This document shows, in pieces, positions 1,814 through 57,633 of a stretch of 64,000 nucleotides of DNA. How positions within the stretch are numbered: position 1 is the stretch's first letter; each line of letters opens with the position of its first letter. Source of the DNA: Ostrea edulis (taxonomy: Eukaryota); contig NC_079171.1 in NCBI RefSeq assembly GCF_947568905.1, positions 75,702,001 to 75,766,000 of the forward strand, read 5' to 3'. The translations under genes were made by a program, and so were the position numbers. The notes under the pieces were generated by a model. The model searched no databases and had not been told where the DNA came from. It saw only the letters and a program-made list of their open reading frames with translations.

Positions 1814-4800
1814 GGATACCTTACATTCAAAGTTATCTTTCAGACTTCCTTTATCAACTAATTCATCTAGTCCACAGGATTTAGTTTCTCCCCTTAAAAG
1901 CTGGGGATGTTTGAGTCTGATACTATCTACGTGTTTTCTAAACTTTTGTCGGCAATCCACCCTATCGTTTAATTCTGAACATTTGCCCAAGATCTTGTAC
2001 GGACCATACCAGAATGAGATCAGTTTTGCGGATCTTCCTATCTTCCTAACCGGAAAGTATACAAAAACGATATCACCAGGATCAAACTTTTCAAAGCTAA
2101 GCTTTCGATCATGCGGTCACTATTTATCTGTTGACACGTACCCGCTTACACCCGGGCCTCTGCAATGCATATGATTTACAGAAATGCCTGCTGTCTACAA
2201 GGCAAGAAACGAACTTATTCAATATATTTACGATGATTGATTCAGCCAATTTATCTAATAAATATATTTACTACGATTCGTATTTCAAAATCAAGATATA
2301 ATTCAATAAGGATTTAGCCTAACCCTTTACTTCCCTAAATTCAATGTCCCTGGACAATTGGCCCTTACCAATGGTTTATACTACCGACCTGAGGTTTCTT
2401 ACCAGATGATGTTTCCAGCTCACTTTGACACTGGGGTACAGACTTATTCAGGCTTTATTGCCAAGTGGCAAAGCTACGATGGTTGATTCAGCCCTAACGT
2501 AGCCTTTTACTTACAAAAGATTGGCTTATTCAGCTTCTCTTATGGTGTAAGGAAAACAGGTTATCACCATGGCAAAACCCCATACCACCTGATTTTCTTT
2601 GATTGACTTAACCTGATTCATCTCACTGTTTTCATAACTGTTTATGATAGTGATACTATGATTAGGCATTACAGCTGAGTTAATGGTTATGGTTGTGAAC
2701 CAAATCCATATATGTGGAAAGATCATAACTATCTTATGCCGAGTAACAATAAAAAATATTCCGTGCACTTAAATATTTAAGTAATATCGGGCGGCCGGAG
2801 CTAGCATGTAGAAACGACAAAAGCGGATGACTCAGGCAAGTTTTTCTGATCAAAGTTTGTCAATCGTTCCGTCTTTCTATGATAGCTTCTTGTATTTTTG
2901 AGTTCTTCTACAGTACAAATTGGGCACACCTAAGTAAACTAAACTCGCCACAAAGCATTTTGAAGTTTATTCGAGTGAACCTCCGCTTAAGGGAGTTTAG
3001 TAAGAAATACCAATGATATGGTGAGATCATTTAAAACAACGTTGTCACTAGAAGCAATGGGACTGAATATTCGAACACCATTCCAGAGCTTTCTTATGTA
3101 GTGAAGATTCAAGGTGATTCAATTCGAAAGTCGCACTTTTAAGATGTTTAAATGTTTTAAATGGAAAACATATTTTAAAATCTTTCTCTCACATACAATG
3201 TTACAACATGCCACATTAACATCCTCAAATAAAATCCAAATGTATAAATTCGAATCCAATCGCACGAGGTTAGGATGGATTCACAATGGGGGTGCAACGT
3301 TTGGTACACAGAATAATATAGGAAAAGAACCTTTGGATAATTTTCTTCTGAATAAGAAGAAAAAGACTACAAATTCCCAACTCTACATACAAACATTGAC
3401 ATGTAGTGTGGATTCACTTTTGTACAAATCATAGCCCAAGGAGCTAGGATGGGGGCCATAAAGGGGGTTGAAAGATTTACATTGAAATATTAAGGAAAGA
3501 ATCACATTTACGTAAGTCAAGATCACTAGGGCAGGGTCCGCCAAAAAGGGGATGGAAGGTCTATTCGAAACATGTGTTGACAAAAAAGAACCTACGTTAA
3601 GAGGCTAAAAGATATTAAGTTTCGATAGGGCAATTATTTGGGGTTTCCAATAGCGAAACATAGACTTTCTTGGTACACTCGGAGGTGGTATCACTTGTCA
3701 GCAACTCCTCTTACACCACTGAAAGCAATTCATTTAAAATTTCACAGAATCTTTATTACATAGTGCCATTTTGCAACTCTTAATCTATGTGTACATCAGA
3801 TAGATATTTGGTGCTTCCAGTAGCAACACTTTGCTATTTTAAATTCTTAAAAAAAGGGTACGACACCAACTGCTCGAAGCCTATTCAAAACGTTTTCCCG
3901 GGGTCAATGTGGAACCACATCAGGAGTCCGAGTTCAAATTGATTTATATATCGAACAAATTCACCTTGATCATCCTTCTACAATGGAGCTTTTCAGGTAG
4001 TTAGTAATTGTAAAGCTCTATAACTATATACACTGTACTAATATGAAAGAGTTGAAGTACAGTGAAATTGTTGCTCAAAATTTGGACGACAAACTCAAAT
4101 TAACATTCCTTATTAACATACAAGAAGTTATCAAAATATGAACGTAAAACCTGAAAAACGGTATCATATCGACATGGTTAATTATCCTTTTATAGAATTG
4201 CGAGAATATCTCTACGCATTTTATATTGCAGCAAATATTATTACGCAAAAAGTTATCATCACATGATTAAAGTCAATAAAACTGGAAGAGGGTGGTAAAA
4301 TCATCCAAAGTATATCGATTTTTTTCTGATCTCCTTGTACAAGTCGACATGATTTTGACGTTATAAACATTTAATTGGAAGATGCCAGTAATTTTATTTT
4401 GAGGTATAACACAACAAAGGAGGTGGTTATACGTTTCCGTAGTTATATCCAGGGTCCTCGTTTGCCCAGCTCTCTATTTTGTATTGCCAAATGGAGCTAT
4501 GATATCAATTGATTCGTTATCTGCACCTTTTAATCTGCATCATTGTCTGTATCTCCTGCAAAACATTCATTTGTGTCATCATCTGTTATGGCATCACTGT
4601 CATGGATTCCATGGCTTCTTGACTTTCCTGTTTCTGTTATAGGCTGACTGAGAATGTCATGTCCAGATACAGCATCCTGTGTTTATATTTCATCTTCCAT
4701 TTCCTCCCTTTGAAGTGGATCTGCTTGTTTTCCAATGTTGTTCCCTTAAAAGCTTTGAGGTTCTACAGTGGATGGGGATGGAATTGTCTATTTCCCAAAT

Positions 4801-5676
4801 CCATAACTTCCCCGTTTTTTTTTTGTTGGTTTATTTAGAGATACAATTTATCTATCTGGGAAAAGAGGATCTGTAACCATTTGGTCACCCTGGTTCTACA
4901 CTATTCTCTGTTGATATTTAAGGTCCAAATAAACAAAAAAAAAATAATTCCACTTCAAAGAAAACGACTTAGTTGTCTTTCATTTTTCTCTCCCAGTTAA
5001 GATTGATCATTTGCAAGAATAAAATACTATTATTACAATAAATCAATAGTAAAAAAAAAAGTGTCCATGACCTCTGAAAGCTGCAAGAGCCTATTATTTT
5101 TTTTAAACCGAACAACTTAACAACTTACTGCTGACAACTAACTCTGAGCCCTAACTCAAACTGCTAAAGGGATTCCGTATTTATACATAGCATGTATTTT
5201 CCAAGACCCGGATGTAAATAACTAGATATCTAGGTCACCATTAATATGAGTATTTACATATAATATAAAGCAACGTATATAATATATAAGAAAACATATC
5301 AATAAAACAAGAAAAACACAGACACATTCGTTATTTTACAAGATGTGCCACATTCTTAACATAATCATGTTTATTAACTAACAGTATCATTAAACGTAGA
5401 AAATGACAATAATGTTGTATATATCTGTAAACCGAAAAAAAAAATTACAAAAAATATATACAGTAAACAAAATAAATCGGAGTGTATATTAAATAAAATC
5501 AATAGTAAACATAATCAATTGTAATATTGATGGTGCAGGGGTTTCAACAGTCTCAAAACCAATACTAGTGTATGATAAACAAACTATATGCTAGTGTTTA
5601 GTACAAAATAAATCCTACTATAAAGTAAGCAAACTCAAACCCTACTGTAGAGTAAATAAAAGCAATCCTAGTGTCT

Positions 5677-6002
5677 TGCTGGTGGACTGTTAGTCCCCGA
5701 GGGTCTCTACGGCCCAGTGACTAAGTAGTTCGTTACTAGCTTGAAAATACGGATGTACATTTAATTGATGTGAACACATTTAGAAATTCATTTCAAAATT
5801 AAGGAGTATCTCCCTCATGCATAGCTCTTATCCTTAGACGAAATTGATTCAACTTTTTTTGGTAATTTGTTTTCCCTAAAACAGCTCTAGCACGTTTGTT
5901 GTTATTTCGGATTTGAAACATTTCGGTTGAGCATCACTGGAGAGACACTATTTGTCGAAATGCGCATCTGATGCATCGAAATTGGCACCGTATGTTTTAC
6001 AT
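5677..6002 (+). mobile_element. Non-LTR retrozyme-like element, ~0.9 unit
   Basis: Matches the ~355-bp repeat unit and ends in ttttacat. Confidence 0.8.
5931..5974 (+). ncRNA. Type I hammerhead ribozyme motif, core mutated (CTGGAGA instead of CTGANGA)
   Basis: gcatca ctggaga gaca ctatt tgtc gaaa tgcgca tc tgatgc. Stems I-III pair; core position A6 is changed to G. Confidence 0.75.
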
Positions 6003-6341: not shown

Positions 6342-6469
6342 ATACAACATTATTGTCTTTTTCTACGTTTGATGATACTGTTAGTTAATAAACATGATTA
6401 TGTTAAGAATGTGGCACATCTTGTAAAATAACGAATGTGTCTGTGTTGTTCTTGTTTTATGACCTCTAT

Positions 6470-6672
6470 GTTAGTCCCCGTTGGTTTCTACAGCTATGCG
6501 TGAGGGAGATAATCCTTAATTTAGAAATGAATTTCTAAATTTTATAACAACAATTAAATATACATCCGTATGTCCAAGCTAGTAACGAAGTACATAGCTA
6601 GTGTGCTGTAGAAACCATCGAGGACTAACAGCAGAGGCCTCAACCCAGGGGTCACAATGTAAAATTTATACT
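6470..6672 (-). mobile_element. Partial, rearranged retrozyme copy without the hammerhead
   Basis: agctatgcgtgagggagataatcc...cccaggggtcacaatgtaaaa matches the unit. 6470-6493 is an inverted piece of 6606-6631. Confidence 0.7.
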
Positions 6673-6699
6673 AAATCCAACTTTTCAAGATCGACATAG

Positions 6700-9600
6700 T
6701 TAATGTGAAACAATGTTAAATGATGTTTCAGAACAACATCGCTTATTAATAAATAATGCAGCAATTAAAATGGATATTGTCTCTATTGAACTGGGCATTA
6801 ACTTCGAATTTGTTTTTATACTTGCTAGGCGTTTCTTTGGTGATGTAGTCCTTCAATTTCATTCCCAAAATGTAATACCTTTTTTTTTTGGATGTACACC
6901 TACAACAATTTCATTCTGTCGAAAGTGTCCAAAATTTCTAATATTTAAAGTAAAGATCTCTTAACAAAGTTTATGCCATCAGGTGTGTAGTGGACATAGC
7001 TGAATTCATTGAACACAGGACAAAGTACCTAGGATGTACAAGCACCCCCTGTCTTAATAGAAACTCTATGTTAACTTCACTTTTTCAAGAACCACATCAG
7101 ACAAAAGCCTTCGAAATGACATATTGTGTATGCTTATAATATTGGAATAATAGTCACAACAAGCTACATTATATCCATTTTAATTCAGATTGTTGAAACT
7201 TCTGTTACATAAATTATCAAAATCCATTGATTGGGCAGTAACCTCTCACAAAATTGAGGTGTTAGTCTGCCGATTTCCAATTAGATATACAGATACGAAG
7301 CAAAGTAAGTGGTATCGATTGTTGTTCATATATCTAATGTTAAGTTAAAGGTCACATCATTTTTGAATCACGTCACCAAATTTATTCAAACCAGATCTCC
7401 AGTAGTTTGAAGTGCAAACAGGACAAACTATATCATTCAACTTTGACAGCTGTATCAGACCATATTTAGCATGTAGCCTATATAAGACTCTGATTAAGCA
7501 CGACTTACTACATACAGAAAAGTATATGATGCTCTATTTTGTTTCTGGTGTATTGTTAAAGAATTTTGATATTGATATTACGTTTTATCATTCTGACAAG
7601 GATTCGGCTTCGATATCATGCTAGATAATGGTCAACAGGGAATGCTTACTCTAATAGGCACCTGTTCCACCTCTGTTGTGGCCAGGGGTCTGTGTTCTTC
7701 TAAATATATATTTTGTGTTGCTTATAGGAGTTTTCATATCCACGAAATGATGGAGTCATCATTGTTGTACCTTTAAACAAAAGCAATGAAAGTGACACAA
7801 CCGGTTGTGTTAATGGAGTTAACAGGAAAAGGAATATGTACATTTCAAAAGAGACGTGATCAAATGTTAAAATGTGGCTGATTGTTTAGCTAGATTACCT
7901 AATTATTAAATAGTTATGCATATATGTAAGGTAAAGCAATTGAGGGTCATCGATAACATTAAAGTTCACAATGGCAGATCAACGCCATCTTAAAACTTTA
8001 TATTTATAAGACATGGAATACTTATTCCTCTTCGGCACAGTATACCACCTCTGGTGTATCCAGGACTCCGTGTTTGCCCCAACTTTCTATTTTGTATTGT
8101 TTATAGAAGTTATGGGATTGATCATTGATCGTTATATACACCTTTCATTCGAAAAACGTTGGACTCTCAGTTGTTATACCACAAGCTGGTGACCAAAAAT
8201 ATACCAACTTTCAGTGTCATAAGATTGAGGATCGAACACTTTTTTAATGAATACGTCATTGGAATCAAAACATTGCAGGTCATTGTATTGTAGATATAAA
8301 ATGTTACTGACCATATACATATGAGAGGCTTATCAAAAGTAACCATGACCCATATTTCTGATTTCGTATATAGTTTGCAAGTCAATAACAATGATGGTTC
8401 AAAATATATCCACAATTTCTACAGAGTATTACATATGTGGCTTCATTTTTTTTTCCATGATAGAGGAACTCAAGATGGAATGAACTTGAAGTTGTATTCC
8501 ATATAATTCAGTTTAGGTAGGGGTGAATGTTTGTAAAGAAATTGACTTTCTTTGAAAATACACAACAGTACCAATTTATCGATTCATTTAGACACCTTAC
8601 ATCTCCAAGGGTGAAAATCTAGAAGTACAAATGCTAAATGATATATCACAAAAAAATGCAGAATACTCATTAACATCAAAATAGTATCCAAAATCTTTCA
8701 GGCATTGAGTTTGTAACATGCGAAATAATTGCATTATTGGTCAACCATTATTTACATTAAAGCTGAGCAGTTTAATAGTAGAAAACACAAGTAATTGTAT
8801 ACGACTTGTCATTGGGGTAGATCTTGTCTGGTGTATTCATATGAATTGTTAGTCAATTGTTTGCATGCCGATTTGGACGTCGGATCAACCCGATTATTTT
8901 ATTAAAAGAAAAAGATTGGACCAGGTGTGACCAGTTGTCATGATGTGCTTACTCCTCCTAGTCACCTGGTGTGTCCAAGAATCCGTATTTGCACACTCTG
9001 GTGTCTGTATTCCTTGTAGTAGTTATCAGATACTTCAAGATCATGATGTTCACCTCTTCATTGCACAATTCAAACACGCGTAGCACAGACTGCTATCTAC
9101 TTTAGCAATACCTTATAGGATAAGATTAAGCGTACTTACTCTTTAGGGAACAGGGTAAACAAATTCAACAGAGCGCAACACAAGTAGCCCTCGTGAGAAC
9201 ACCACAAGCACACTAACGTAGGAACAAATTCAATATAATTGTCATAGCACTACACTGCGTATTTAATTTCACGGGTAAGAGATCAAGGTTACAATATGTC
9301 GGGTATGTTTAAGTTGAACGCCCTGAAACTATCAAACATATCATATCACAATCATTCAGACACTGTGCGCGTATTTCAAGGTCATGGCGATATCATATTT
9401 CTGTCCAGGTTTAATTGATTTATTCGCAAGCATTACAACAAATAGGTGACTATCAGTACATATATTACATAAAGAGTTCCATTCTGTTGTAAAATATACT
9501 AGTAAATGTTCGGTATTAATCTCCGTCATTATTGATCCGCAATTACACCAAATAAATAACCTAAATAGATATAGATAGGGAAGCAGCACACGTTAACACC

Positions 9601-11362: not shown

Positions 11363-12539
11363 GAAGCCTAAATATATTATGTATGAATCAATTTCAGCGA
11401 AAACAAAACACCATATTTAATTTGATCTTATAGTTTTGTGTAAAAAGTTAAATACAAGGATTCAGAAATTAAATTATAACACTAGATTAATTGGTGCACT
11501 GTAGCTTTCTCAAAGTTTGTGAAGAAATTGCAAATCTGCATTCAAAACAAGAGAAGGTCGTCTGCTATTGCAACACGTCTGGTGACATGACTGTCATTGC
11601 AATTTATCTCTAAAGTCAAAGGAAAACTCGATAATTAAGCGAGAGCTTACTACAAACAACATTTGATAAGAGGTTCATATAACCTTTTTTGTAAATGAAA
11701 ATTATCCCGCAAATACGTCCTGGCTACATGTTTTTGACAAACAAGAGACCTACTAAAAAATTCTAAAACCACACAGTGTGAGTGATCACTGATCGTTATA
11801 TTAGCCTTACATAAGGCAGATCCGTTTGTCGTCTTTGCTAGCAATCACATTCCAACAATCGCACATGTGTATAGATATCGTGCCATTGAACATGAGAAGG
11901 AAATTACTCCAACTATCATGTTTAATCACACCACAATTTTTACGTTGATGTAGAGACCCGATGTGATATTGTGTCAGTGTTTTTATGTAAATGTAATGAA
12001 ATAAAACAAGTATGAAGTAAAACAGGTATGCATAGTGTATGCTGTTGTTTGAAATGGTCACCACCATGATACGTTAACCATGCGATTGTATTGATAAATA
12101 TTAAACCAATACTGATTAATGATTGATAGCAATGATGGGCTTCTGAACACGGCGTTTTAGTCAAAGACACCAAAATGCAGTAAGTTTTTTTTCACGGATG
12201 AATGGATTCGGACGAAACTTATCTATGGTGATTGTTGTTTGCCTGCGATTTACCTTGTCAAGAGATCATGGTGTTGTGTTTAATTTTGAAATTCACAGGG
12301 CCATCTGGAGACTATCTGTAGCCAGTGTGTATACTGCTTGCATACCTAATGGTAACTGACACATTCTAGACCCGCCCCTCTTTCTGTCTTCCGTATTATC
12401 AGTCATTGGCTCAATATATGATTTATTCTATAAAAATAGAGCTATCAGAAATTAATGATGAACGTTTTTCAATAAGTTATACATTTTAGAACCTAATGTG
12501 GAAACTATTGTTTGATTTATGATTGAGTACTCTACAATA

Positions 12540-13080
12540 CATTTCTATAGAGGAGATATAAAATACAATTATATCAAAGTTGCATTGTTCATGGGGGCTT
12601 TCTTTAAAGATTATTTACGAGAAAATAGCAGTTGTGTACAAGTCAATGCTATTAAAACTCTGTTATACTGGGCTTTTTCAAGATCTAAAGAATGTCGGTA
12701 AGCATTGACTGTGAGTATTATTAAAACACCTTTCTTGGGTAGTTTCAGAACACAGTCGCTGTAGAGGTCACTCCACTTGAAATATGTTGTTAAATGTTTG
12801 TTTCAGAGGCGGCTTGCCATTGATCACAATACACATGGAACTGTGGGTGTTAACTTAAATTTGGTTTCTTGGAGGAATTGGCATGGCTTATGAGATAGTA
12901 AAACCTGGTTTTGATGACTTCAAGTAGATATATATTACACCTACGTCACAATCAGATGTAGAAACAGAACCAGGTTTCTGCTTCCCAAAACGTGCGTTTT
13001 GTTTGATTTTTTACATGATACTATGATTATTCGCCATCGATTCCTCCAGAGTCTTTCTTATCAGCTGAGGTTAAAATCAA
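12540..13080 (+). pseudogene. Decayed LRR-coding segment
   Basis: NAIKTLLYWAFS, IKTPFLGSFR..SLHLKY, LHLRHNQM, IPPESF. The paralog reads LDLRHNQM at 60235-60258. Confidence 0.55.
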
Positions 13081-13804
13081 AGTTGAGATTGTGTTACAAA
13101 GGGCGGGGGGGGGGGTCAAGGCGATTCAAGCTTTAGAAGAAGTCGGTTGCAGAACAAATGGCATTGTTTGCGGATGAAAGCGCGCCGATTGCATTATGCA
13201 TATCTATGATGCATTCAGTGTACATTTATTATTCATGGATGTAAAAGTGTTGCAATGATCTGAGTTGGTACGTATGGTCAACATATGGAATTTCGGGACA
13301 TCAGGAAGTTGGGGAGACGGATGGGAAAGGGGAGGTGGCACCAATGCAGATTTCCACTAGTATCATGATATCAGCTGATAATATTTCACTTTGTTGTGAG
13401 GACACAATATCAAAGCTAGTTTCTTTTAATTTGATGTTTTTATTTACATTGCATGCAATTATAGATATGAACAGGGATCAATCTCACAACTCCTACACGC
13501 AATGTAAAATATATAGTTGACCAAACTTTATGATAGCAGATTATTCTTCATTTTTTTAATACATGATATGCGGGAAGATGATATCCATATTATATTGTAA
13601 CGTTGAAACCGCCCCTAATTTTAATGACTAATGTGTTTAAAAATTCACTCACGTGCATACATATTACAATTGTACAGAATAGTGGTAACATTCAGATCCA
13701 CCAACTATAACCCACAATACATTTTTTCTGATACATATTTTATATATCTCAATGCGTCTGAAAAGTGTAGGAAATAACTGCTGTCTTGTGTATTAAAGGT
13801 ATGG

Positions 13805-14092
13805 TAAGTACTTCGTTACTAGTTTGAAAATACGTATGCATTTTTAATTGCTGTGATAAAATTTAGAAATTAATTTTAAAATTAAGGATTATTTCCGTCA
13901 TACATATCTCTTATCATTAGACGAATTTTAACTTCACTTTTGGGCACTCTATTTCCCCCTATAATAGCTCTAGCAAGTTTATTGTTGTTGGGTTTTTTTT
14001 TTCGGATTTTAAACATTTCAGATGAGCATCACTGAAAATACATTATTTGTCGAAATGTTATCATCAAAATTGGTACCGTATAAGTTTTACAT
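13805..14092 (+). mobile_element. Retrozyme-like copy with a dead hammerhead (14026-14060)
   Basis: Core reads CTGAAAA and stem III is deleted; ends in ttttacat. Absent from the paralogous site at ~61225-61240. Confidence 0.8.
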
Positions 14093-15030: not shown

Positions 15031-15184
15031 CACTTTTTTGCACAGTTTTGTTTCCCTTAAAGGAGCTTTAAAACATCATTGTTATTTTGGATTTCAAACA
15101 TTTCGGTTGAGCACCACTGAGGATACATCATTTGTCGAAATGCGCATCTGGGGCATCAAAATTGATACCGTATAAGTTTCACAT
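15031..15184 (+). mobile_element. 5'-truncated retrozyme-like copy
   Basis: Unit match ending in tttcacat. The paralogous empty site is at ~16100-16120 (ggacacatagtaaa). Confidence 0.8.
15111..15154 (+). ncRNA. Type I hammerhead ribozyme motif, core intact, stem II closing pair broken
   Basis: gcacca ctgagga taca tcatt tgtc gaaa tgcgca tc tggggc. Confidence 0.75.
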
Positions 15185-29599: not shown

Positions 29600-30260
29600 C
29601 TGTGATATCGAACTATGACACCACAGAGTCGCCCAGTTCTGCTTCATGCATATATATTTTATTGAAAGTAGACTTTAACAGCCAACTGAAAACTGACAAC
29701 TCAACAGATGAGCTCAGCGTCTTCACCATGACGGTTATATTCATTGCTACATAAATATGGGAATATGACATTCCCATATTTATGTAGCAATAGTCTATTT
29801 TCACTTAAATATGGTGTTTATATATCTCAACTAATTCGATACGCAAAGGCTTGTTCTGCGTATAGTCAGTTTTTAAATCGAGGCAAGCTACTGGCAAACG
29901 GGTTGATGGCACAGGGGTTTCAACAGTCTCGATTCAAGTCAGCATTTAGTATATTATATGGTCGCTATAACGATTTAGTACGTCAATACAACCTATCATT
30001 GAGTCAAGTGCTGACTGACGTGTTTAATATCGATGGTTAGGCCGTTATTGGAACACTGATTTTGACTACGGATAACTTCGTTTACCTGATCAGGATTTAA
30101 GGCTCACGGCAGGTGTGACCGTTCGACAGGGGATGCTTACTCCTCCTAGGCACTTGATCCCACCTCTGGTGTGTCCAGGGGTCCATTTTTGCCCAACTAT
30201 CTATTTTGTATTGCTTATAGGAGTTATGCGATTGATCACTGTTCGTAATCTTTACCTTGC
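29600..30260 (+). mobile_element. Penelope-like RT 3' fragment with 3' UTR
   Basis: ORF 29744..30040, GVYISQLIRYAKACSAYSQFLNRGKLL..., followed by the shared 3' UTR. Confidence 0.85.
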
Positions 30261-30350
30261 ATCCGTGTACTTTATCTTCACCTTTCAATCTACCATGTTG
30301 TAGACCTAACTTCAAAGCCTAATGTAACATTAAGGTAGATGCAAGGATAT

Positions 30351-30760
30351 ATTATTTGTCGAAATGCGCATCTGGTGCATCAAAATTGGTACCGTATACG
30401 TTTTACATTAGGACCCCTGGGTCGAGGCCTCTGCTGGTGGACTGTTAGTCCCCGAATATCTTTACAGCCTATTAGCTAAGTACTTCGTTACTAGCTTGAA
30501 AATACGGATGCATATGTAATTTCTGTTATAGAATTTAGAAATTCAATTCAAAATTAAGGATTATCTCCCCCATGGCTAGCTCCTATCCATACACAACTTT
30601 GACTCCTCTTTTTTGGGGCACACTGTTTTCCCCTATAAAAACCCTTAAACTTCACTGTTAATTCGGATTTCAAATATTTCGGTTGAGCATCACTGAAGAG
30701 ACATTGTTTCTCGAAATGCGCATCTGGTGCATCAAAATTGGTACCGTACACGTTTTACAT
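30351..30760 (+). mobile_element. Retrozyme-like array, ~1.15 units
   Basis: The 3' half of a hammerhead at 30351-30378 and a full one at 30687-30730. Predicted cleavage sites after 30372 and 30724 give a 352-nt monomer. Ends in ttttacat. Confidence 0.85.
30687..30730 (+). ncRNA. Type I hammerhead ribozyme, core intact (one C.C mismatch in stem II)
   Basis: gcatca ctgaaga gaca ttgtt tctc gaaa tgcgca tc tggtgc. Confidence 0.85.
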
Positions 30761-31707: not shown

Positions 31708-31956
31708 GTGAGTGAATTCAATTGTTCCCTGTTGATGTAAGTTTAAACACCTCTATGATAGGGGTATTGATAACCTTGTCATATATGATATATTCGCTAT
31801 AACTTGTGTTCTTCAAATTGATTTCAACATATTTTTTCGAATGACAAATAATTGGACACTGATTTCAAACAATTGTGTTACCCCTTAATCGAACTGTGAA
31901 TCATGACCCAGCGAAGATACACATGTAACGAAAATTAGTCAATCTCATCTTTATCA

Positions 31957-33290
31957 TGAAATGTGAAGATAGCGAATAATGATCAACCTCATCAATCCGA
32001 TCAGGAATAAAAAGTAACGAGTTGGCAAACGCGGACCCCTGCCAACACTAGAGGTGGATGAGTAGTAAGCATCCTCTGTCGAACGACCATACTCACCATT
32101 AGGTTTATATCATGATCAGGTAAACGGAATTATCCGTAGTTAAAATGGGTGTGTCGAAGTAACAATCAGTATGAAACACGTCAGACCACATTTGACCCAA
32201 TGACAGGTTGTATTTGCAGTTATATCGTTATAACGACCATGAAATTAGCGAAATGCAGATTTTAAATGAAATTCCTGCATCACCAACGTGTTTGTCAGTA
32301 GACTGAACCAATTTAAAAGGAGATCATGCGCAGAATAAGTGTTTGGGTATCGAAACAGTTGAGCTATCTGAACACCATATGCAGGTGGGTGTTAAATGCA
32401 AAACTTATACGGTAACAATTTTGATGTACCAGGTGCGTATTTCGACAAATTATGTCTCTTCAGTGATGCTCAACCGAAATGTTTGAAATCCGAAATAACA
32501 ATGAAGACTTCGAGCTATTATAAACAACACAGTGTACCAAAAATGTGGAGTTTAGTTCGTTTAAGGATAAGAGCTATGCGTGAGGTAGATAATCCTTAAT
32601 TTTGAAATGAATTTCTAAATTTTATAACAGCAATTAAATATACATCCGTATTTTCAAGCTACTAACGAAGTACTTAGCTACTGTGCTGTAGAAACCCTCG
32701 GGAACTAACAGTCCACCAGAAGATGCTTCGACCCAAATCTCATGATTTAAAACTCATACGGTACCAATGTTGATGCACCAGATGCGCATTTCGACAAATT
32801 ATGTCTTTTTAGTGATGTTCAACCGAAATGTTTGAAATCCGAAATAACAATGAACTTTTAGATCTATTATAGGCAAAAACGGTGTGCCAAAAACGTGGAG
32901 TGAAATTCGTTTGAGGATAAGAGCTATGTGTGAGGGAGATAATCCTTAATCTTGAATTGAATTTCTAAATTTAATAACAGGAATTAGATATGAATCCGTA
33001 TTTTCTAGCTAGTAACGAAGTACTTAGCTACTGGGCTGTAAAGACCCTCGGGGACTAGCATTCCACCAGCAGAACCCTCAACCCAGGGGTAATAATGTGG
33101 AATTTATACAGTATCAATTTTGATGCACCAAATTGCTACATGCATGTGGGGAGTTGGTGATGGTGAAACTAAACTAATTCCGTAAATCCCAAAAGGAATA
33201 CGAAATTGAGAATGGGGTAAACACAAACCTTTGAAAATATGAGACAATGTCAAGTGGTTGGTGATTAAGTATATACTGCCGATAGTATCT
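31957..33290 (-). mobile_element. Old Penelope-like 3' fragment split by a retrozyme insertion
   Basis: 31957-32387 is the reverse complement of the PLE C-terminus plus UTR. The homology resumes at 33131 (aattgctacatgcatgtggggagttgg). Confidence 0.7.
32396..33130 (-). mobile_element. Retrozyme-like tandem dimer (349 + 350 nt monomers plus a 36-nt tail)
   Basis: Hammerheads at 32426-32469 (cleavage triplet changed to ACC) and 32775-32818 (core CTAAAAA). The array stops at gcacca (33130), the predicted cleavage point. Confidence 0.9.
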
Positions 33291-35029
33291 CCACACCAGG
33301 AGCATACACCAGCACAGACAATGCATATTGTTCATTTATTTCAACCAGCAATGTAAACCCGCGATAGTCTTTCGTGGTTTAGACTGTAGCTATGCCTAAG
33401 GGCATGTGTTTTTAAATTACAGTTTTTCAGAAGAATGATTGTTTGGAACGTATGGCTGACCGCAATTTTGAGTATAAACTATATATCAAACGCTGGCATG
33501 CTATATGTTGTGGGATTTTGTTAAAATTTCGATACCTTTTTAAAAATTACAAATGACATATCAAATCCTGTGTATGATGCATGGGTACAAAGCCAATCTT
33601 TCCATTCCACACTATTGTGTTTGTACATCCATCCATGCAGTTGATTTTTTCTCAAATCCACGTTTCCCATCCATTTGTATACATTGTATACGATAACATA
33701 CCACTACATAAAGTATAATGAAGGTCAACATTTTCTTCATTCCTTGGGTAGTCAAAATTAATTCCAATGATTAGGGAACGAAATAATTCCAAGTTTATAG
33801 CAAACGGAATCAGTCGTAATGTAAACCGAGAAAGGTAACGTCATTTCCAGTATTCAGAATTTAACGTTATATAATATACAGAATTAATAGTAGTCTATAG
33901 TAAGCAGAATCAATCAAGGTCGAAACCAAATGTAGTAAACAGAAATAAGTCTAGTGTGTATAGTCCATGACATAAAATATAGTATTCTAAATAATTATGT
34001 ATTATCGTAAACAGAATGAATCTTATTCTATGAAGAGATGAGGAAAATGAAAAGTGATCAATCTATTAAATTCTTTAATAATTACAAAATTAAGAGCTGG
34101 ACAAACACAGGCGCTTTGACATACCAGGGGTGGAATCAATCGTCAAAAGGGAAGTACGCATCCCTTATCGATATGTTATGCATGTGATTGATAACTGTTC
34201 ATTATCTTCACCTTTCATGTGGAAATTTGAATTGCTATGGGAAACAATATGTTAGAAATTACCAAATATGGTTAAGGCCTTCCCTTTTCCAACTGAAAAC
34301 ATTATTGTTGTTTTAAGGTGTTTTATTTCTCTATCATTATTTCTTTTTTTACAAATTTTGTGCACGCGATTTCTCGGATATGCGTGGATAGATTTTCGAT
34401 ATGTATTCACTTGAACTCAATAAGTGGTTTTTTTTTAATTACGATTACGTCAATTATTAGTAAGACATTGACGTTGTTTCAAAGATTTAGAGTGTCGTTT
34501 TGTCCAGAAGTGTTTTTGCAAAGTATCAAATACATCAGCTTCAAATTCTCAGCGAGTGTAGAGGAGACTTGGCAGATGTGACATAGTGGATTGCGATTTG
34601 TCTGAAGCAAAAGGCGTTGAAGCTCGCGGTAAAAGTTTGTTGCAATTATTGATACGTTTTCTTTAATATCTTTTTATACAAAAAAGATTTTGTAAAGGCA
34701 TATATAACAAATATTACAGACAATGAAGATACCTATTCTATGATATCAATTTTTAAGGGCGAAGTATATAAAGGCCAAGAGGGGTGAACAGTATTCTTTA
34801 AATATCTCAAAAACTTAAAAGAATTAGTAAAGAATTGTTGAAGGAAAGTTGTCTGTTATCAACTATAGTCAATCATCACGGTCTGCATCCTCTGATGTCA
34901 GCGATATGAAAGTTGACTACGTGATAAGGGATTTTAAGGAGAATAATATAATAAACTTTGATGCCTCCTATCTCTTAAACGAAAACCAGTTGGTAAAGCA
35001 GTATATAATATAAATTGGTCAGAATATGA

Positions 35030-54890: not shown

Positions 54891-57445
54891 ATGAATTTCC
54901 GGAATATTATATTTACTCATATACTTGTTTTTCAGCGTCTTAATGATTAAAACAGTTCTTCATTTGATAGAACTTTGTTTTCTTTTTTCGTCATTTTGAA
55001 CGAAGCGGCATGTGGGTCAATAATATAAAATGTATGTAAACGTGTTGTTTACCAATTCCAGCGATTGTTATCAATCAAAAGGGTAAAAATAAGTAATAAA
55101 TATCATTTTAAAATATGTATTGGGGTATAAATACGGGTTGTTCTGGTGATCAATTTCCACAAAGCCCAACTTAATGATGCAATGTGAAATTGTCATATAC
55201 CCGCCTTTCATAGTCTATTTCTCTCGAAGATGTTTATAAATTTCCACTGTCATCTGGCCCAGAAAAATAGATGATTTCAGCAGGGGTCCCAAAATCTGGC
55301 ATTCAAATAAGGAATATATAAGCAAATCAAAACAACGTTTAATTTGATCAGAAATTACTTTGTGTTTTTTAACAGGAGCGTGAAGTTGGCATAAAATTGC
55401 CAAAATTAATGAAACATTTCATAAATTCAGGGTATATTTTTCGATTTCTCTTAATACACAATGTATATTAAATTCATTTTGCTCGACAGATGGCCACACC
55501 TTTTCCTAAGCAATAATCTGGATAAAATTTAACAGTTATCAAACTCTTTTTGAAAAATGGCGGGAAAACTCTTATTCATGACGTAATAATGCTATAAAAT
55601 TAGAAATAACCTTGATTTAAGTTGAGATTGTGTACTTGGCATCTATTTAACTTATTCAAAACATAGATCAAGCTTGATTCAAGACACATTTAAATCAAAG
55701 AATTTTTTTGGGCCTTTTTATGTACACAATCGTACCTTGTTCTTTGCAATATTTATAGGAGACGTTCGCTTATCATAGTTTGTGTTATGACGTTTGTAGT
55801 GGGACTTGTTGATATAATTCAACAGAGTACCAGGTATTACGAAGGTTTAAGTACCCTCTATCTTAATAGTAACTCTTCATTATCTTCACTTTTTGAAAGA
55901 AACGGAAAACGTTCTTCGAATTACAAATTATATCTGCTTTTAGTATAATAATGATCGTTATATAATTTAAAATACATTGATTTAAACCGAGATTGTTGAA
56001 AAATCTGTAACATCAAGTCATTAAATTGAATTGGTTGGCCATTAACCTCTTACACAATTGAGATGCCATTTTGCCGATAGCATCTTTATCCAATAATATT
56101 CCCAAAGAGTAAGGAGGTAAGGATGATTATATGGTGTTGACTATGATATATCTGATACACACACGGATGAAAATAAGAAAGATTCATAGATAAACCGTCG
56201 TTGATATATCTAAATATCCAGTAAAAGGTGAAGGCAGACTTGTTTTCTAATCAGATGATCAAATTTATTCAAACAACAATTACAACAGGGTAATTCTTAA
56301 CAGAAAAGACTATTGCATCCAACTTTGGCAAATGTATCAAATCATATAGATACAATATATAAGGATCACGGTGGGTATGACTGGTCAACAGTGAGTGCTT
56401 ACTCATTTCGGGTACCTGGACTTACCTCTGGTATATTCAAGATTCTGTGTTTGTTCAACTCTCTATTTTGTATTGGTTATAGGAGTTGTGAAATTGAACA
56501 CTGATCGTTATATTTATTTTTCGTTCAGTATGCAACTTATCTAATTCGCTTATTAAGCATGGATTCTTAAATACAGGAGAAAGTATGGTGTGTTATTTGG
56601 TTTTGATGTATTTTATAGAATCTTGATATTTATCGTAGATCTTATGTTTTTATCATTCGCCTAGACAATATGTTGATATCGATAATGATATATCTAACAA
56701 ATGAAAAGGAAGCTATTCCTTGTAGTGCCTTTTAACAAATTCAACGAGAGTGGGACAACCAGTTCTGTTAGTGGAGTTAACAAGACAATGAATATGTATT
56801 TTTTTTAAAACAGACACGGATTAAATCTCGAATTGTGGCTGATTATTTTTCTGCTTTTAGCTAATCATGAAACAACCATTCAAACATACAGGACCAATCA
56901 ATTGAGTGTTTTCGGTAACGTTACAGACTACACGTTACACAAATCTTTGTATTGTTATTTGCCAATACACAAACCGTCCGTGGGCTTCGTCGCGGATATC
57001 ACCACTTTGCAGGATGTGTGAAATATTGCGCCGACTAAATAGTGATGGTAAAGTGGAATTTCAAAAAAGATATTTTAATATCGATCAAAACGAATTAACT
57101 TGATTCAATACATAAATTAAAGCAATGACGATGATTAATAAATGGGAATTAATCTATTACATATATCAATAGAAGCAAAAATGTTTCCATCAAATGATTT
57201 TAAATCAATTACATTTGACCGAAACTTATATCTAATCTGGATAATACAATGGTCTATGTACAACAAGTATATTCCATGAAAAATGCTAAGGATGTTTGGC
57301 ACAATATAATACATCATGGCTAGAGAGTCTACATAGTTGAACTTTACAGAAGTGTTTGACTTCTTGCGAAGAGTGGGACGTATATCTAATGGGCCTGTAT
57401 GATGTAATATCTTGTCTAATATCATACGTATATTATGCTGACCTA

Positions 57446-57633
57446 ATGCATAGCTCTTATCCTTGGACGAATTTGGCTTCACTTTTTTGGCACACTGTTT
57501 TTGGCTATATTTAGCTCTAAAACTTCATAGTTATTTCGGATTTCAAACATTTCGGTTGAGCATCACTGAAGAGACATTATTTGTCAAAATGCGCATCTGG
57601 TGCATCAAAATTGGTACCGTATAAGTTTTACAT
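57446..57633 (+). mobile_element. 5'-truncated retrozyme-like copy; hammerhead at 57560-57603 with GAAA changed to AAAA
   Basis: gcatca ctgaaga gaca ttatt tgtc aaaa tgcgca tc tggtgc; ends in ttttacat. Confidence 0.85.

What the first reader, a model, noticed from the sequence alone, without database searches (positions are those of the whole stretch)
32396..33130. Retrozyme array begins exactly at the predicted self-cleavage site
In hammerhead sense (minus strand), the array starts TGGTGC at 33130, the first base after the predicted AUC cut. Beyond it, the interrupted older PLE target sequence resumes immediately (aattgctacat...). The insert is two full monomers (350 and 349 nt) plus a 36-nt tail. 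Inference: the cDNA was copied from an RNA whose 5' end was made by ribozyme cleavage, which is a genomic record of past ribozyme activity.
Basis: partly seen in the sequence, partly recalled or inferred. Interest (0 to 1): 0.8.

Follow-up and report, generated by a model that had tools for sequence, protein, structure and literature searches.

The report
Oyster retrozyme array starting at ribozyme cut
A small non-coding mobile repeat with a self-cutting hammerhead RNA motif sits inside an old Penelope-like retrotransposon and starts at the predicted cut site, but in this family only the other end is clearly fixed, so this one start is a plausible and unproven trace of ribozyme cutting.

Summary
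On the minus strand, 33130-32396 is 350 + 349 + 36 nt of a hammerhead-bearing repeat. It lies between codons 103 and 107 of a decayed Penelope-like (PLE) reverse-transcriptase copy. Its first base is the base after the predicted AUC cut, give or take 3 nt of microhomology.

The element is an oyster relative of the known animal non-LTR retrozymes. This scan had already found the family on other DNA of this genome.

The strong signal is at the 3' end. All 7 complete window copies end 36 nt past the cut site, at ...TTTTACAT, and raw genome reads suggest roughly 10,000 insertions do the same. This fits the internal start of reverse transcription reported for a PLE enzyme.

The 5' ends are ragged. 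Window copies start at unit positions about 55, 105, 235, 323, 1, 104 and 196. Genome-wide reads show no dominant 5' end at the cut site:
- The loose-end count there is under 18% of the 3'-end count.
- The depth step across the cut site is about 5%, against 3-4% in neighbouring bins.

An excess of a few percent is not excluded. At least eight unverified notes from other windows report the same pattern.

Run-off on a ribozyme-cleaved RNA is therefore plausible (about 0.5) but unproven for this locus. Both ribozyme motifs in this array are now mutated.

The parts
32396..33130 (-). Retrozyme array: two units plus a 36-nt tail (735 nt)
   Evidence: Tandem Repeats Finder: period 350, 2.1 copies. 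Sequence read. blastn to the other copies.
32781..33130 (-). Monomer 1 (350 nt), starting at TGGTGC, which is unit position 1
   Evidence: It is 90.3% identical to the majority of window copies.
32432..32780 (-). Monomer 2 (349 nt)
   Evidence: It is 90.5% identical to the majority and 83.9% to monomer 1.
32396..32431 (-). 36-nt tail (unit positions 1-36), ending ...TTTTGCAT. This is the family's fixed 3' terminus.
   Evidence: All 7 complete window copies end at this unit position. The genome-wide depth step and loose ends fall at the same position.
32759..32825 (-). Hammerhead motif at the monomer 1 / monomer 2 junction (cut would fall between 32781 and 32780). The core is mutated to CUAAAAA.
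   Evidence: Alignment A1. Pairing counts.
32410..32476 (-). Hammerhead motif at the monomer 2 / tail junction (cut would fall between 32432 and 32431). The core CUGAAGA is intact, but U16.1 is C and the loop GCGC is ACGC.
   Evidence: Alignment A1.
33131..33209 (-). Left part of the interrupted PLE reverse-transcriptase remnant (aa 77-103 of the 184-aa ORF frame)
   Evidence: tblastn, E 4e-5. Alignment to paralogues.
31956..32395 (-). Right part of the interrupted PLE remnant: aa 107-184 at 32385-32162, then the 3' UTR down to the PLE terminus at about 31956
   Evidence: tblastn, E 9e-16. blastn to 29809-30262 and other copies. PLE 3' ends.
41976..42617 (-). Comparator retrozyme copy: starts at unit position about 104, then one full unit and the tail. 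It is the copy closest to the family majority and was the reference for the read test.
30346..30760 (+). Comparator retrozyme copy: starts at unit position about 323 (27 nt before a cut site), then one unit and the tail
5670..6002 (+). Comparator copy: starts at unit position about 53-58 and ends at +36
13805..14092 (+). Comparator copy: starts at unit position about 105 and ends at +36
15031..15184 (+). Comparator copy: starts at unit position about 235 and ends at +36
57442..57633 (+). Comparator copy: starts at unit position about 196 and ends at +36

Best explanation
This is one old insertion of an oyster non-LTR retrozyme, a roughly 350-nt non-coding repeat carrying a type-I hammerhead. 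A Penelope-like element's reverse transcriptase probably put it there.

Inferred mechanism:
1. The enzyme nicked an AT-rich site (..AATATT..) inside a decayed PLE copy.
2. It started cDNA synthesis at a fixed internal site of the retrozyme RNA, 36 nt past a hammerhead cut site.
3. It copied two units.
4. It ran off a 5' end that the hammerhead of the next unit upstream had made.

The template would then have been a linear RNA of more than two units, cleaved at its 5' side and uncleaved at its two internal sites. A circle that opened during copying would give the same result.

What is shown: the insertion, its boundaries and the family-wide fixed 3' end. What is inferred: run-off at a cleaved end. 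At most a small minority of the family's insertions show that pattern.
For: - Boundaries and the interrupted target.
- Hammerhead core and helices fit the metazoan type-I pattern: helix I of 6 bp, helix II of 3 bp with G10.1-C11.1, helix III of 2 bp capped by palindromic GCGC, cut after AUC. 90.7% of cells pair, against 19-49% when partners are slid. The pattern is as described in PMC4209133.
- Fixed 3' end at +36: all 7 complete window copies. Genome-wide, depth jumps from about 4,800 to 11,500-13,300 per read class at that base, with 8,920 and 8,424 loose-end reads whose flanks differ (agreement 0.37).
- A PLE enzyme has been shown in vitro to start reverse transcription at fixed internal RNA sites, which explains fixed genomic 3' ends (PMC11167929).
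- Only 1 of 11 unit starts in the window abuts non-repeat DNA, and it does so at position 1.
- A stall at RNA structure would be expected 3' of helix I, near +22, and not at +1 (inference).
- At least eight first-reader notes report the same 5' boundary at other loci of this genome, several with lengths near 386 = one unit + 36. These are leads only.
- The read depth allows an excess of roughly 0.5-2 thousand out of about 30 thousand insertion-equivalents at the cut site.
Against: - This is a single locus chosen because it stood out.
- The junction is ambiguous by up to 3 nt (ATT against the unit's ATC).
- Six of seven complete window copies and both arrays in L002/L003 start elsewhere.
- Genome-wide there is no listed loose-end peak at the cut site. 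The depth step there (about 5%) is hardly above neighbouring bins (3-4%).
- Frangieh et al. found that hammerhead cleavage was not needed for insertion by the anole PLE in vitro. They also found no RNA-seq reads ending at the cut site.
- The template needs two uncleaved internal sites next to a cleaved one.
- Rfam gives no hammerhead hit even at E up to 10.
- Cleavage activity was not tested.
Confidence: 0.5

Rival explanations
1. Coincidence. The 5' end is an ordinary premature stop of reverse transcription (5' truncation) or a microhomology-guided joining (target ..CAAT, unit ..GCAT) that happens to fall on the cut site. The template could have been an uncleaved multimer or a circle copied by rolling-circle reverse transcription.
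For: - 5' ends are ragged in the window (unit positions about 55, 105, 235, 323, 104, 196) and in L002/L003.
- Genome-wide depth falls smoothly upstream of the cut site, with no listed loose-end peak there.
- 2-3 nt of possible microhomology at the junction.
- With roughly 10,000 insertions, about 30-50 exact coincidences are expected genome-wide.
Against: - The per-insertion chance is only about 0.3-0.5% (exact) to 1-2% (within 3 nt).
- At least eight further loci with the same boundary were noted in about 5% of the genome, where about 2-3.5 would be expected. These notes are unverified.
Confidence: 0.35
2. Reverse transcriptase stalled at the folded or dimerised hammerhead (helix I, or the palindromic AUGCGCAU duplex). 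The cDNA then ended near the cut site without any cleavage.
For: The family's hammerhead has a palindromic helix III able to form an intermolecular duplex (PMC4209133).
Against: - A stall should fall 3' of the paired segment, around +7 to +22.
- It should also give a cluster of ends and not position 1.
- No depth step is visible within unit positions 1-36 beyond edge effects.
Confidence: 0.07
3. The array was once longer, or began elsewhere, and a later deletion or rearrangement produced the present left edge.
For: The region is old and decayed. The PLE copy is about 70% identical to its paralogues, and complex inverted retrozyme junctions exist elsewhere in the window.
Against: The PLE coding frame continues across the insertion with only about 1 nt of 12 missing. 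A deletion would have had to stop exactly at both the unit start and the original target breakpoint.
Confidence: 0.05

Closest known systems
Metazoan non-LTR retrozymes (Cervera and de la Pena 2020, PMC7229834), in particular the 350-390-nt mussel retrozyme
   Same: - Short tandem units, about 350 nt, each with a type-I hammerhead.
- No long ORF, LTR or poly(A).
- Thousands of dispersed copies.
- Co-occurrence with PLEs.
- Low GC.
   Different: - The host is an oyster and the sequence family differs.
- This study adds a fixed 3' end at +36 and ragged 5' ends. The passages of the paper I searched and read do not mention truncation or a fixed end.
- Circular RNA was not shown here.
PLE reverse transcription with internal initiation and the 30-40-bp 'tail' (Frangieh et al. 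2024, PMC11167929; Craig et al. 2021, PMC8557442)
   Same: - A fixed 3' boundary a set distance downstream of a hammerhead.
- 5' truncation and partial tandems.
- An AT-rich target and no clear target-site duplication.
- Insertion into PLE sequence itself.
   Different: - The template here is a non-coding retrozyme.
- The distance from cut site to start site is 36 nt, against about 85-92 nt in the anole element.
- The PLE copies in this window end their ORF in the reverse-transcriptase thumb, so they look Naiad-like. That clade is reported to lack canonical hammerheads.
Ribozyme-defined 5' ends of R2 and RTE-type non-LTR elements, made by HDV-like ribozymes (from my own knowledge: Eickbush and Eickbush 2010; Ruminski et al. 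2011)
   Same: The idea that a self-cleaving ribozyme makes the 5' end of the RNA template, so genomic copies begin at the cut site.
   Different: - In those elements it is the rule for full-length copies. Here at most a few percent of insertions show it.
- The ribozyme is a hammerhead that cuts at its own 3' side within a repeat.
Canonical metazoan type-I hammerhead with short palindromic helix III (PMC4209133)
   Same: - Core CUGANGA..GAAA..UC.
- Helix I of 6 bp.
- G10.1-C11.1.
- Helix III of 2 bp with a 4-nt palindromic loop, implying dimer-dependent cleavage.
   Different: - Helix II is only 3 bp.
- There is no match to the Rfam hammerhead models.

Membership tests
Type-I hammerhead ribozyme | Conserved core C3-U4-G5-A6-N7-G8-A9, G12-A13-A14, the A15.1-U16.1 pair, and H17 before the cut | tested here: met
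   The family majority and copies c42617, c30346 and c57441 read CUGAAGA..GAAA..UGCGCA-UC. The majority letters in genome reads agree (table 3). In the target array both motifs carry disabling changes: CUAAAAA in one, U16.1 to C in the other.
Type-I hammerhead ribozyme | Helices I, II and III around the core, with helix I open | tested here: met
   16 proposed pairs are 90.7% paired across 9 window copies, against 19-49% for slid partners. There are two one-sided pairing-preserving changes and no compensatory double changes.
Type-I hammerhead ribozyme | Match to the curated covariance models (Rfam Hammerhead_1 and related) | tested here: not met
   No hammerhead hit at the gathering score on the whole window. 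None at E up to 10 on 32000-33600 or 41900-42700.
Type-I hammerhead ribozyme | Self-cleavage 3' of C17 | not testable with these tools
Metazoan non-LTR retrozyme | Tandem or partial-tandem units of about 170-400 nt, each with a type-I hammerhead, and no coding capacity, LTR, PBS or PPT | tested here: met
   Period 350. The longest ORFs are 53-65 aa. Many 'goes back 359' read joints show tandem copies genome-wide.
Metazoan non-LTR retrozyme | Dispersed multicopy family alongside PLEs | tested here: met
   8 copies in the window. About 55,000 of 9 million reads per run were laid on one unit. 15 or more PLE 3' ends lie in the window.
Metazoan non-LTR retrozyme | Expression as monomeric circular RNA | tested here: inconclusive
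   RNA-seq contigs of one mollusc run cover the hammerhead region at depth above 100 and span the cut site. Contigs cannot show ends or circles, and DNA carry-over is not excluded.
PLE-type target-primed insertion | Fixed 3' end from internal initiation, with variable 5' truncation | tested here: met
   The mechanism itself is taken from PMC11167929 and was not tested here.
PLE-type target-primed insertion | The element shares its 3' terminus with the autonomous partner | tested here: inconclusive
   PLE copies end ..CTT(T/G)CAT and the retrozyme ends ..TTT(A/G)CAT. Only about 6 terminal bases are alike.
Ribozyme-defined 5' end (as in R2/RTE) | Genomic copies as a rule begin at the ribozyme cut site | tested here: not met
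   1 of 7 window copies and 0 of 2 related arrays begin there. There is no dominant loose-end peak or depth step genome-wide.

The most novel reading that the evidence does not exclude
A distinct minority class of retrozyme insertions, a few percent and often exactly n units + 36 nt, begins at the hammerhead cut site. That would be genomic evidence that ribozyme-cleaved linear RNAs with 5'-OH ends, and not only circles, are templates for PLE-type reverse transcription that starts internally at +36. It would also show that the hammerhead was active in the germ line.
Probability: 0.4. Interest if true: 0.6.

Novelty: new member of a known kind. Interest (0 to 1): 0.4.

Why it matters
How animal retrozymes are copied back into DNA is unknown. 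The current model assumes circular RNA templates and an unidentified reverse transcriptase.

This family gives two readable marks:
- A 3' end fixed 36 nt past the cut site in roughly 10,000 insertions. This ties retrozymes to the internal-initiation mechanism just described for PLE enzymes.
- Possibly a small class of 5' ends on the cut site. This would show that cleaved linear RNA can serve as template.

Both can be tested on any good oyster assembly with a simple boundary histogram. The single locus by itself proves little.

Tried and rejected
- **Rfam.** No hammerhead hit on the whole window or on two subregions.
- **Single-strand folding.** Folding the junction did not recover the hammerhead, z-score -0.29. 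This is expected for a dimer-dependent motif and is not informative.
- **Metagenome contig scans.** The exact 23-mer of the unit start found nothing. The 17-mer gave 96 hits on contigs from unrelated samples, none from the sample that holds the related retrozyme. I took them for chance matches and did not inspect them.
- **Fetching oyster DNA through PLE proteins.** A 20.9-kb Ostrea edulis locus (L001) holds no retrozyme. The genome-average density of about one per 80-100 kb makes this route useless.
- **Searching retrozyme-derived ORFs as proteins.** Only 4 hits. Two gave contigs L002 and L003 with a related family.
- **Target-site duplications.** None convincing at any of 7 copies.
- **Solitary 36-nt tails.** These would be expected if linear monomers were common templates. 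None are in the window.
- **Copy at 6684-6492.** I first thought it started near the cut site. It continues upstream with a deletion of roughly 15 nt across the cut site.
- **Read depth.** It is blurred by edge effects and by subfamily divergence: the loose ends at 42263, 42411 and 42455 are retrozyme-like and are not boundaries. It only bounds the cut-site class and does not measure it.

Full report
**What is there**

On the minus strand the stretch 33130-32396 is 735 nt. It holds a 350-nt unit, a 349-nt unit and the first 36 nt of a third. The two units are 84% alike, and each is about 90% like the majority of the window's copies.

Each unit ends in a hammerhead-like motif. In the better-preserved copies it reads, from 5' to 3':
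- GAGCAUCA (helix I, 5' strand)
- CUGAAGA (core)
- GAC-loop-GUC (helix II)
- GAAA
- UGCGCA (a two-pair helix III with palindromic loop GCGC)
- UC, then the cut
- UGGUGC (helix I, 3' strand), with a further CGGU/ACCG extension of helix I

Sixteen proposed pairs are 90.7% paired in nine window copies, against 19-49% when the partners are slid. There are no compensatory double changes, because the copies are too close. The layout matches what is described as canonical for animal type-I hammerheads: helix I of 6 bp and a short helix III with a palindromic loop, implying action as a dimer (PMC4209133). Rfam models do not detect it. In the target array both motifs are disabled. One has the core changed to CUAAAAA. 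The other has U16.1 changed to C and a broken palindrome.

**The boundaries**

The first base of the array (33130) is the base after the predicted cut. The flanks are two collinear pieces of one decayed PLE reverse-transcriptase copy:
- aa 77-103 of the window's 184-aa PLE ORF (which carries the RYIDDV motif) match 33209-33129.
- aa 107-184 match 32385-32162.
- The PLE 3' UTR then runs on to its usual terminus near 31956.

Three uninterrupted paralogues read ..TTATGTAGCAATAT-TCCATTATCACCTGC.. across the site. About 11 of the 12 target bases between the flanks are still present, and there is no target-site duplication.

One caveat applies. The three bases before TGGTGC are ATT, the unit has ATC, and the target has AAT-A. 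The junction is therefore uncertain by up to 3 nt.

**The family**

The window holds seven complete copies and one broken copy. All seven complete copies end at the same unit position, 36 nt past a cut site, at ...TTTTACAT, with unrelated flanks. Their 5' ends differ: unit positions about 55, 105, 235, 323, 1, 104 and 196. Of 11 instances of unit positions 1-36, ten are preceded by the hammerhead 3' half. Only the one at 33130 is preceded by flank.

The runs that hold this DNA are labelled as one organism and as 'oyster metagenome'. The closest named PLE protein is from Ostrea edulis. A related family, 73-76% identical with the same hammerhead and a 3' end at +35/36, occurs on two contigs of a JGI sample. 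Those arrays start at unit positions about 215 and 226.

**Genome-wide test with raw reads**

I laid two whole-genome read sets (about 1.3-1.4 Gb read from each) on one permuted unit of the best-preserved copy (42190-42550), so that the cut site lay in the middle. About 55,000 and 53,000 reads were laid.
- **3' end.** Depth per read class jumps from about 4,800-5,100 to 11,500-13,300 exactly at +36. There are 8,920 and 8,424 loose-end reads there, and their flanks do not agree with each other (agreement 0.37). The fixed 3' end therefore holds for the order of 10,000 insertions. That figure assumes a genome near 1 Gb, which is my assumption.
- **5' ends.** Upstream of the cut site depth declines gradually. 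Summed over the four read classes it runs 53.4, 50.8, 48.8 and 47.1 thousand in successive 13-nt bins.
- **Cut site.** The step across it is about 5%, against 4% and 3% in the next bins. The cut site is not among the six listed loose-end places per run, whose smallest counts are 1,641 and 1,622.
- **Other listed places.** Those at 42263, 42411 and 42455 have retrozyme-like consensus and reflect indel or subfamily variants, not boundaries.

So 5' ends at the cut site are under about 18% of insertions by loose ends. By depth they are probably no more than a few percent. Edge effects near the +36 boundary and subfamily divergence prevent a finer estimate. The test rules out the cut site as the usual 5' end. 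It does not rule out a minority class several-fold above the per-base background of about 0.3-0.5%.

**Leads from the scan**

Other first readers noted the same family elsewhere in this genome. They reported the fixed 3' end and ragged 5' ends. At least eight loci were said to start at the cut site, several about 386 nt long, which is one unit + 36. I could not read those loci. If they are accurate, nine cases in about 5% of the genome exceed the 2-3.5 expected by chance. That is consistent with the small excess the depth profile allows.

**Mechanism**

A PLE enzyme from the anole starts reverse transcription at fixed internal sites of its RNA, some 85-92 nt downstream of its hammerhead cut site. 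This accounts for the fixed genomic ends and the 30-40-bp 'tail' of PLEs. Hammerhead cleavage was not needed in vitro (PMC11167929; PMC8557442).

The retrozyme's fixed +36 end fits the same behaviour. So do its missing poly(A), its ragged 5' ends, its AT-rich target and its insertion into a PLE copy. These steps are inferred by analogy and are not shown here.

For the 5' end at position 1 the simplest reading is run-off on an RNA whose 5' end was made by the hammerhead of the next unit upstream, with the two internal sites left uncut. A circle that opened during copying would give the same result. The main rival is an ordinary truncation that coincides with the site. I put these at about 0.5 and 0.35. 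A stall at RNA structure and a later deletion are less likely.

**Verdict**

- The element is a new member of a known kind, an oyster retrozyme, already noted elsewhere in this scan.
- The inference that this edge records ribozyme cleavage is reasonable but not demonstrated.
- The family-wide signal is at the 3' end, not the 5' end.

Noticed in passing
window 29743-29791: A 22-nt inverted repeat with 5 nt between the arms (ATTGCTACATAAATATGGGAAT and its complement) sits in the uninterrupted PLE paralogue, as a roughly 37-nt extra segment. It lies at the same ..ATGTAGCAAT.. site where the retrozyme is inserted in the other copy. This could be a recurrent nicking hot spot in this PLE sequence.
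   Followed up: partly
window 13805 and 42617: Two independent copies with different flanks start at nearly the same unit position (about 104-106, ..CTAAGTACTTCG..). This may be a second preferred 5' end, or chance.
   Followed up: no
window 6440-6700: A head-to-head inverted junction of retrozyme fragments lies at 6491/6492. The minus-strand copy at 6684-6492 also has a deletion of roughly 15 nt spanning the cut site. This recalls the inverted structures described for PLE insertions.
   Followed up: partly
window, PLE 3' ends at 1818, 8149, 26789, 30263, 31955(-), 38785, 39382, 41015, 43288, 51935 and others: Fifteen 5'-truncated copies of one PLE family share the 3' terminus ..CACCTT(T/G)CAT. 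Its last six bases or so resemble the retrozyme terminus ..TTT(A/G)CAT. The ORF ends in the reverse-transcriptase thumb with no C-terminal endonuclease, so the family looks Naiad-like.
   Followed up: partly
whole window: There are eight retrozyme copies in 64 kb, against a genome average of about one per 80-100 kb estimated from reads. The window is a dense nest of PLE and retrozyme insertions.
   Followed up: partly
L002:3269-4243 and L003:105-972: A related retrozyme family (73-76% identical) occurs in JGI sample 3300045951, with the same hammerhead and a 3' end at +35/36. The mobile family is therefore shared by at least two bivalve sources.
   Followed up: partly
window 42353-42437 (reads laid): RNA-seq contigs of a 'mollusc metagenome' run cover the hammerhead region at depth 100-230 and cross the cut site. 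One contig runs from the +36 end into flank, which points to read-through transcription or DNA carry-over.
   Followed up: no
window 42252-42259: The reference copy c42617 carries an 8-nt insertion. In table 4 it is listed as left out in about 6,550 of 11,550 reads at that place. Variant subfamilies also diverge upstream of 42411 and 42455.
   Followed up: no
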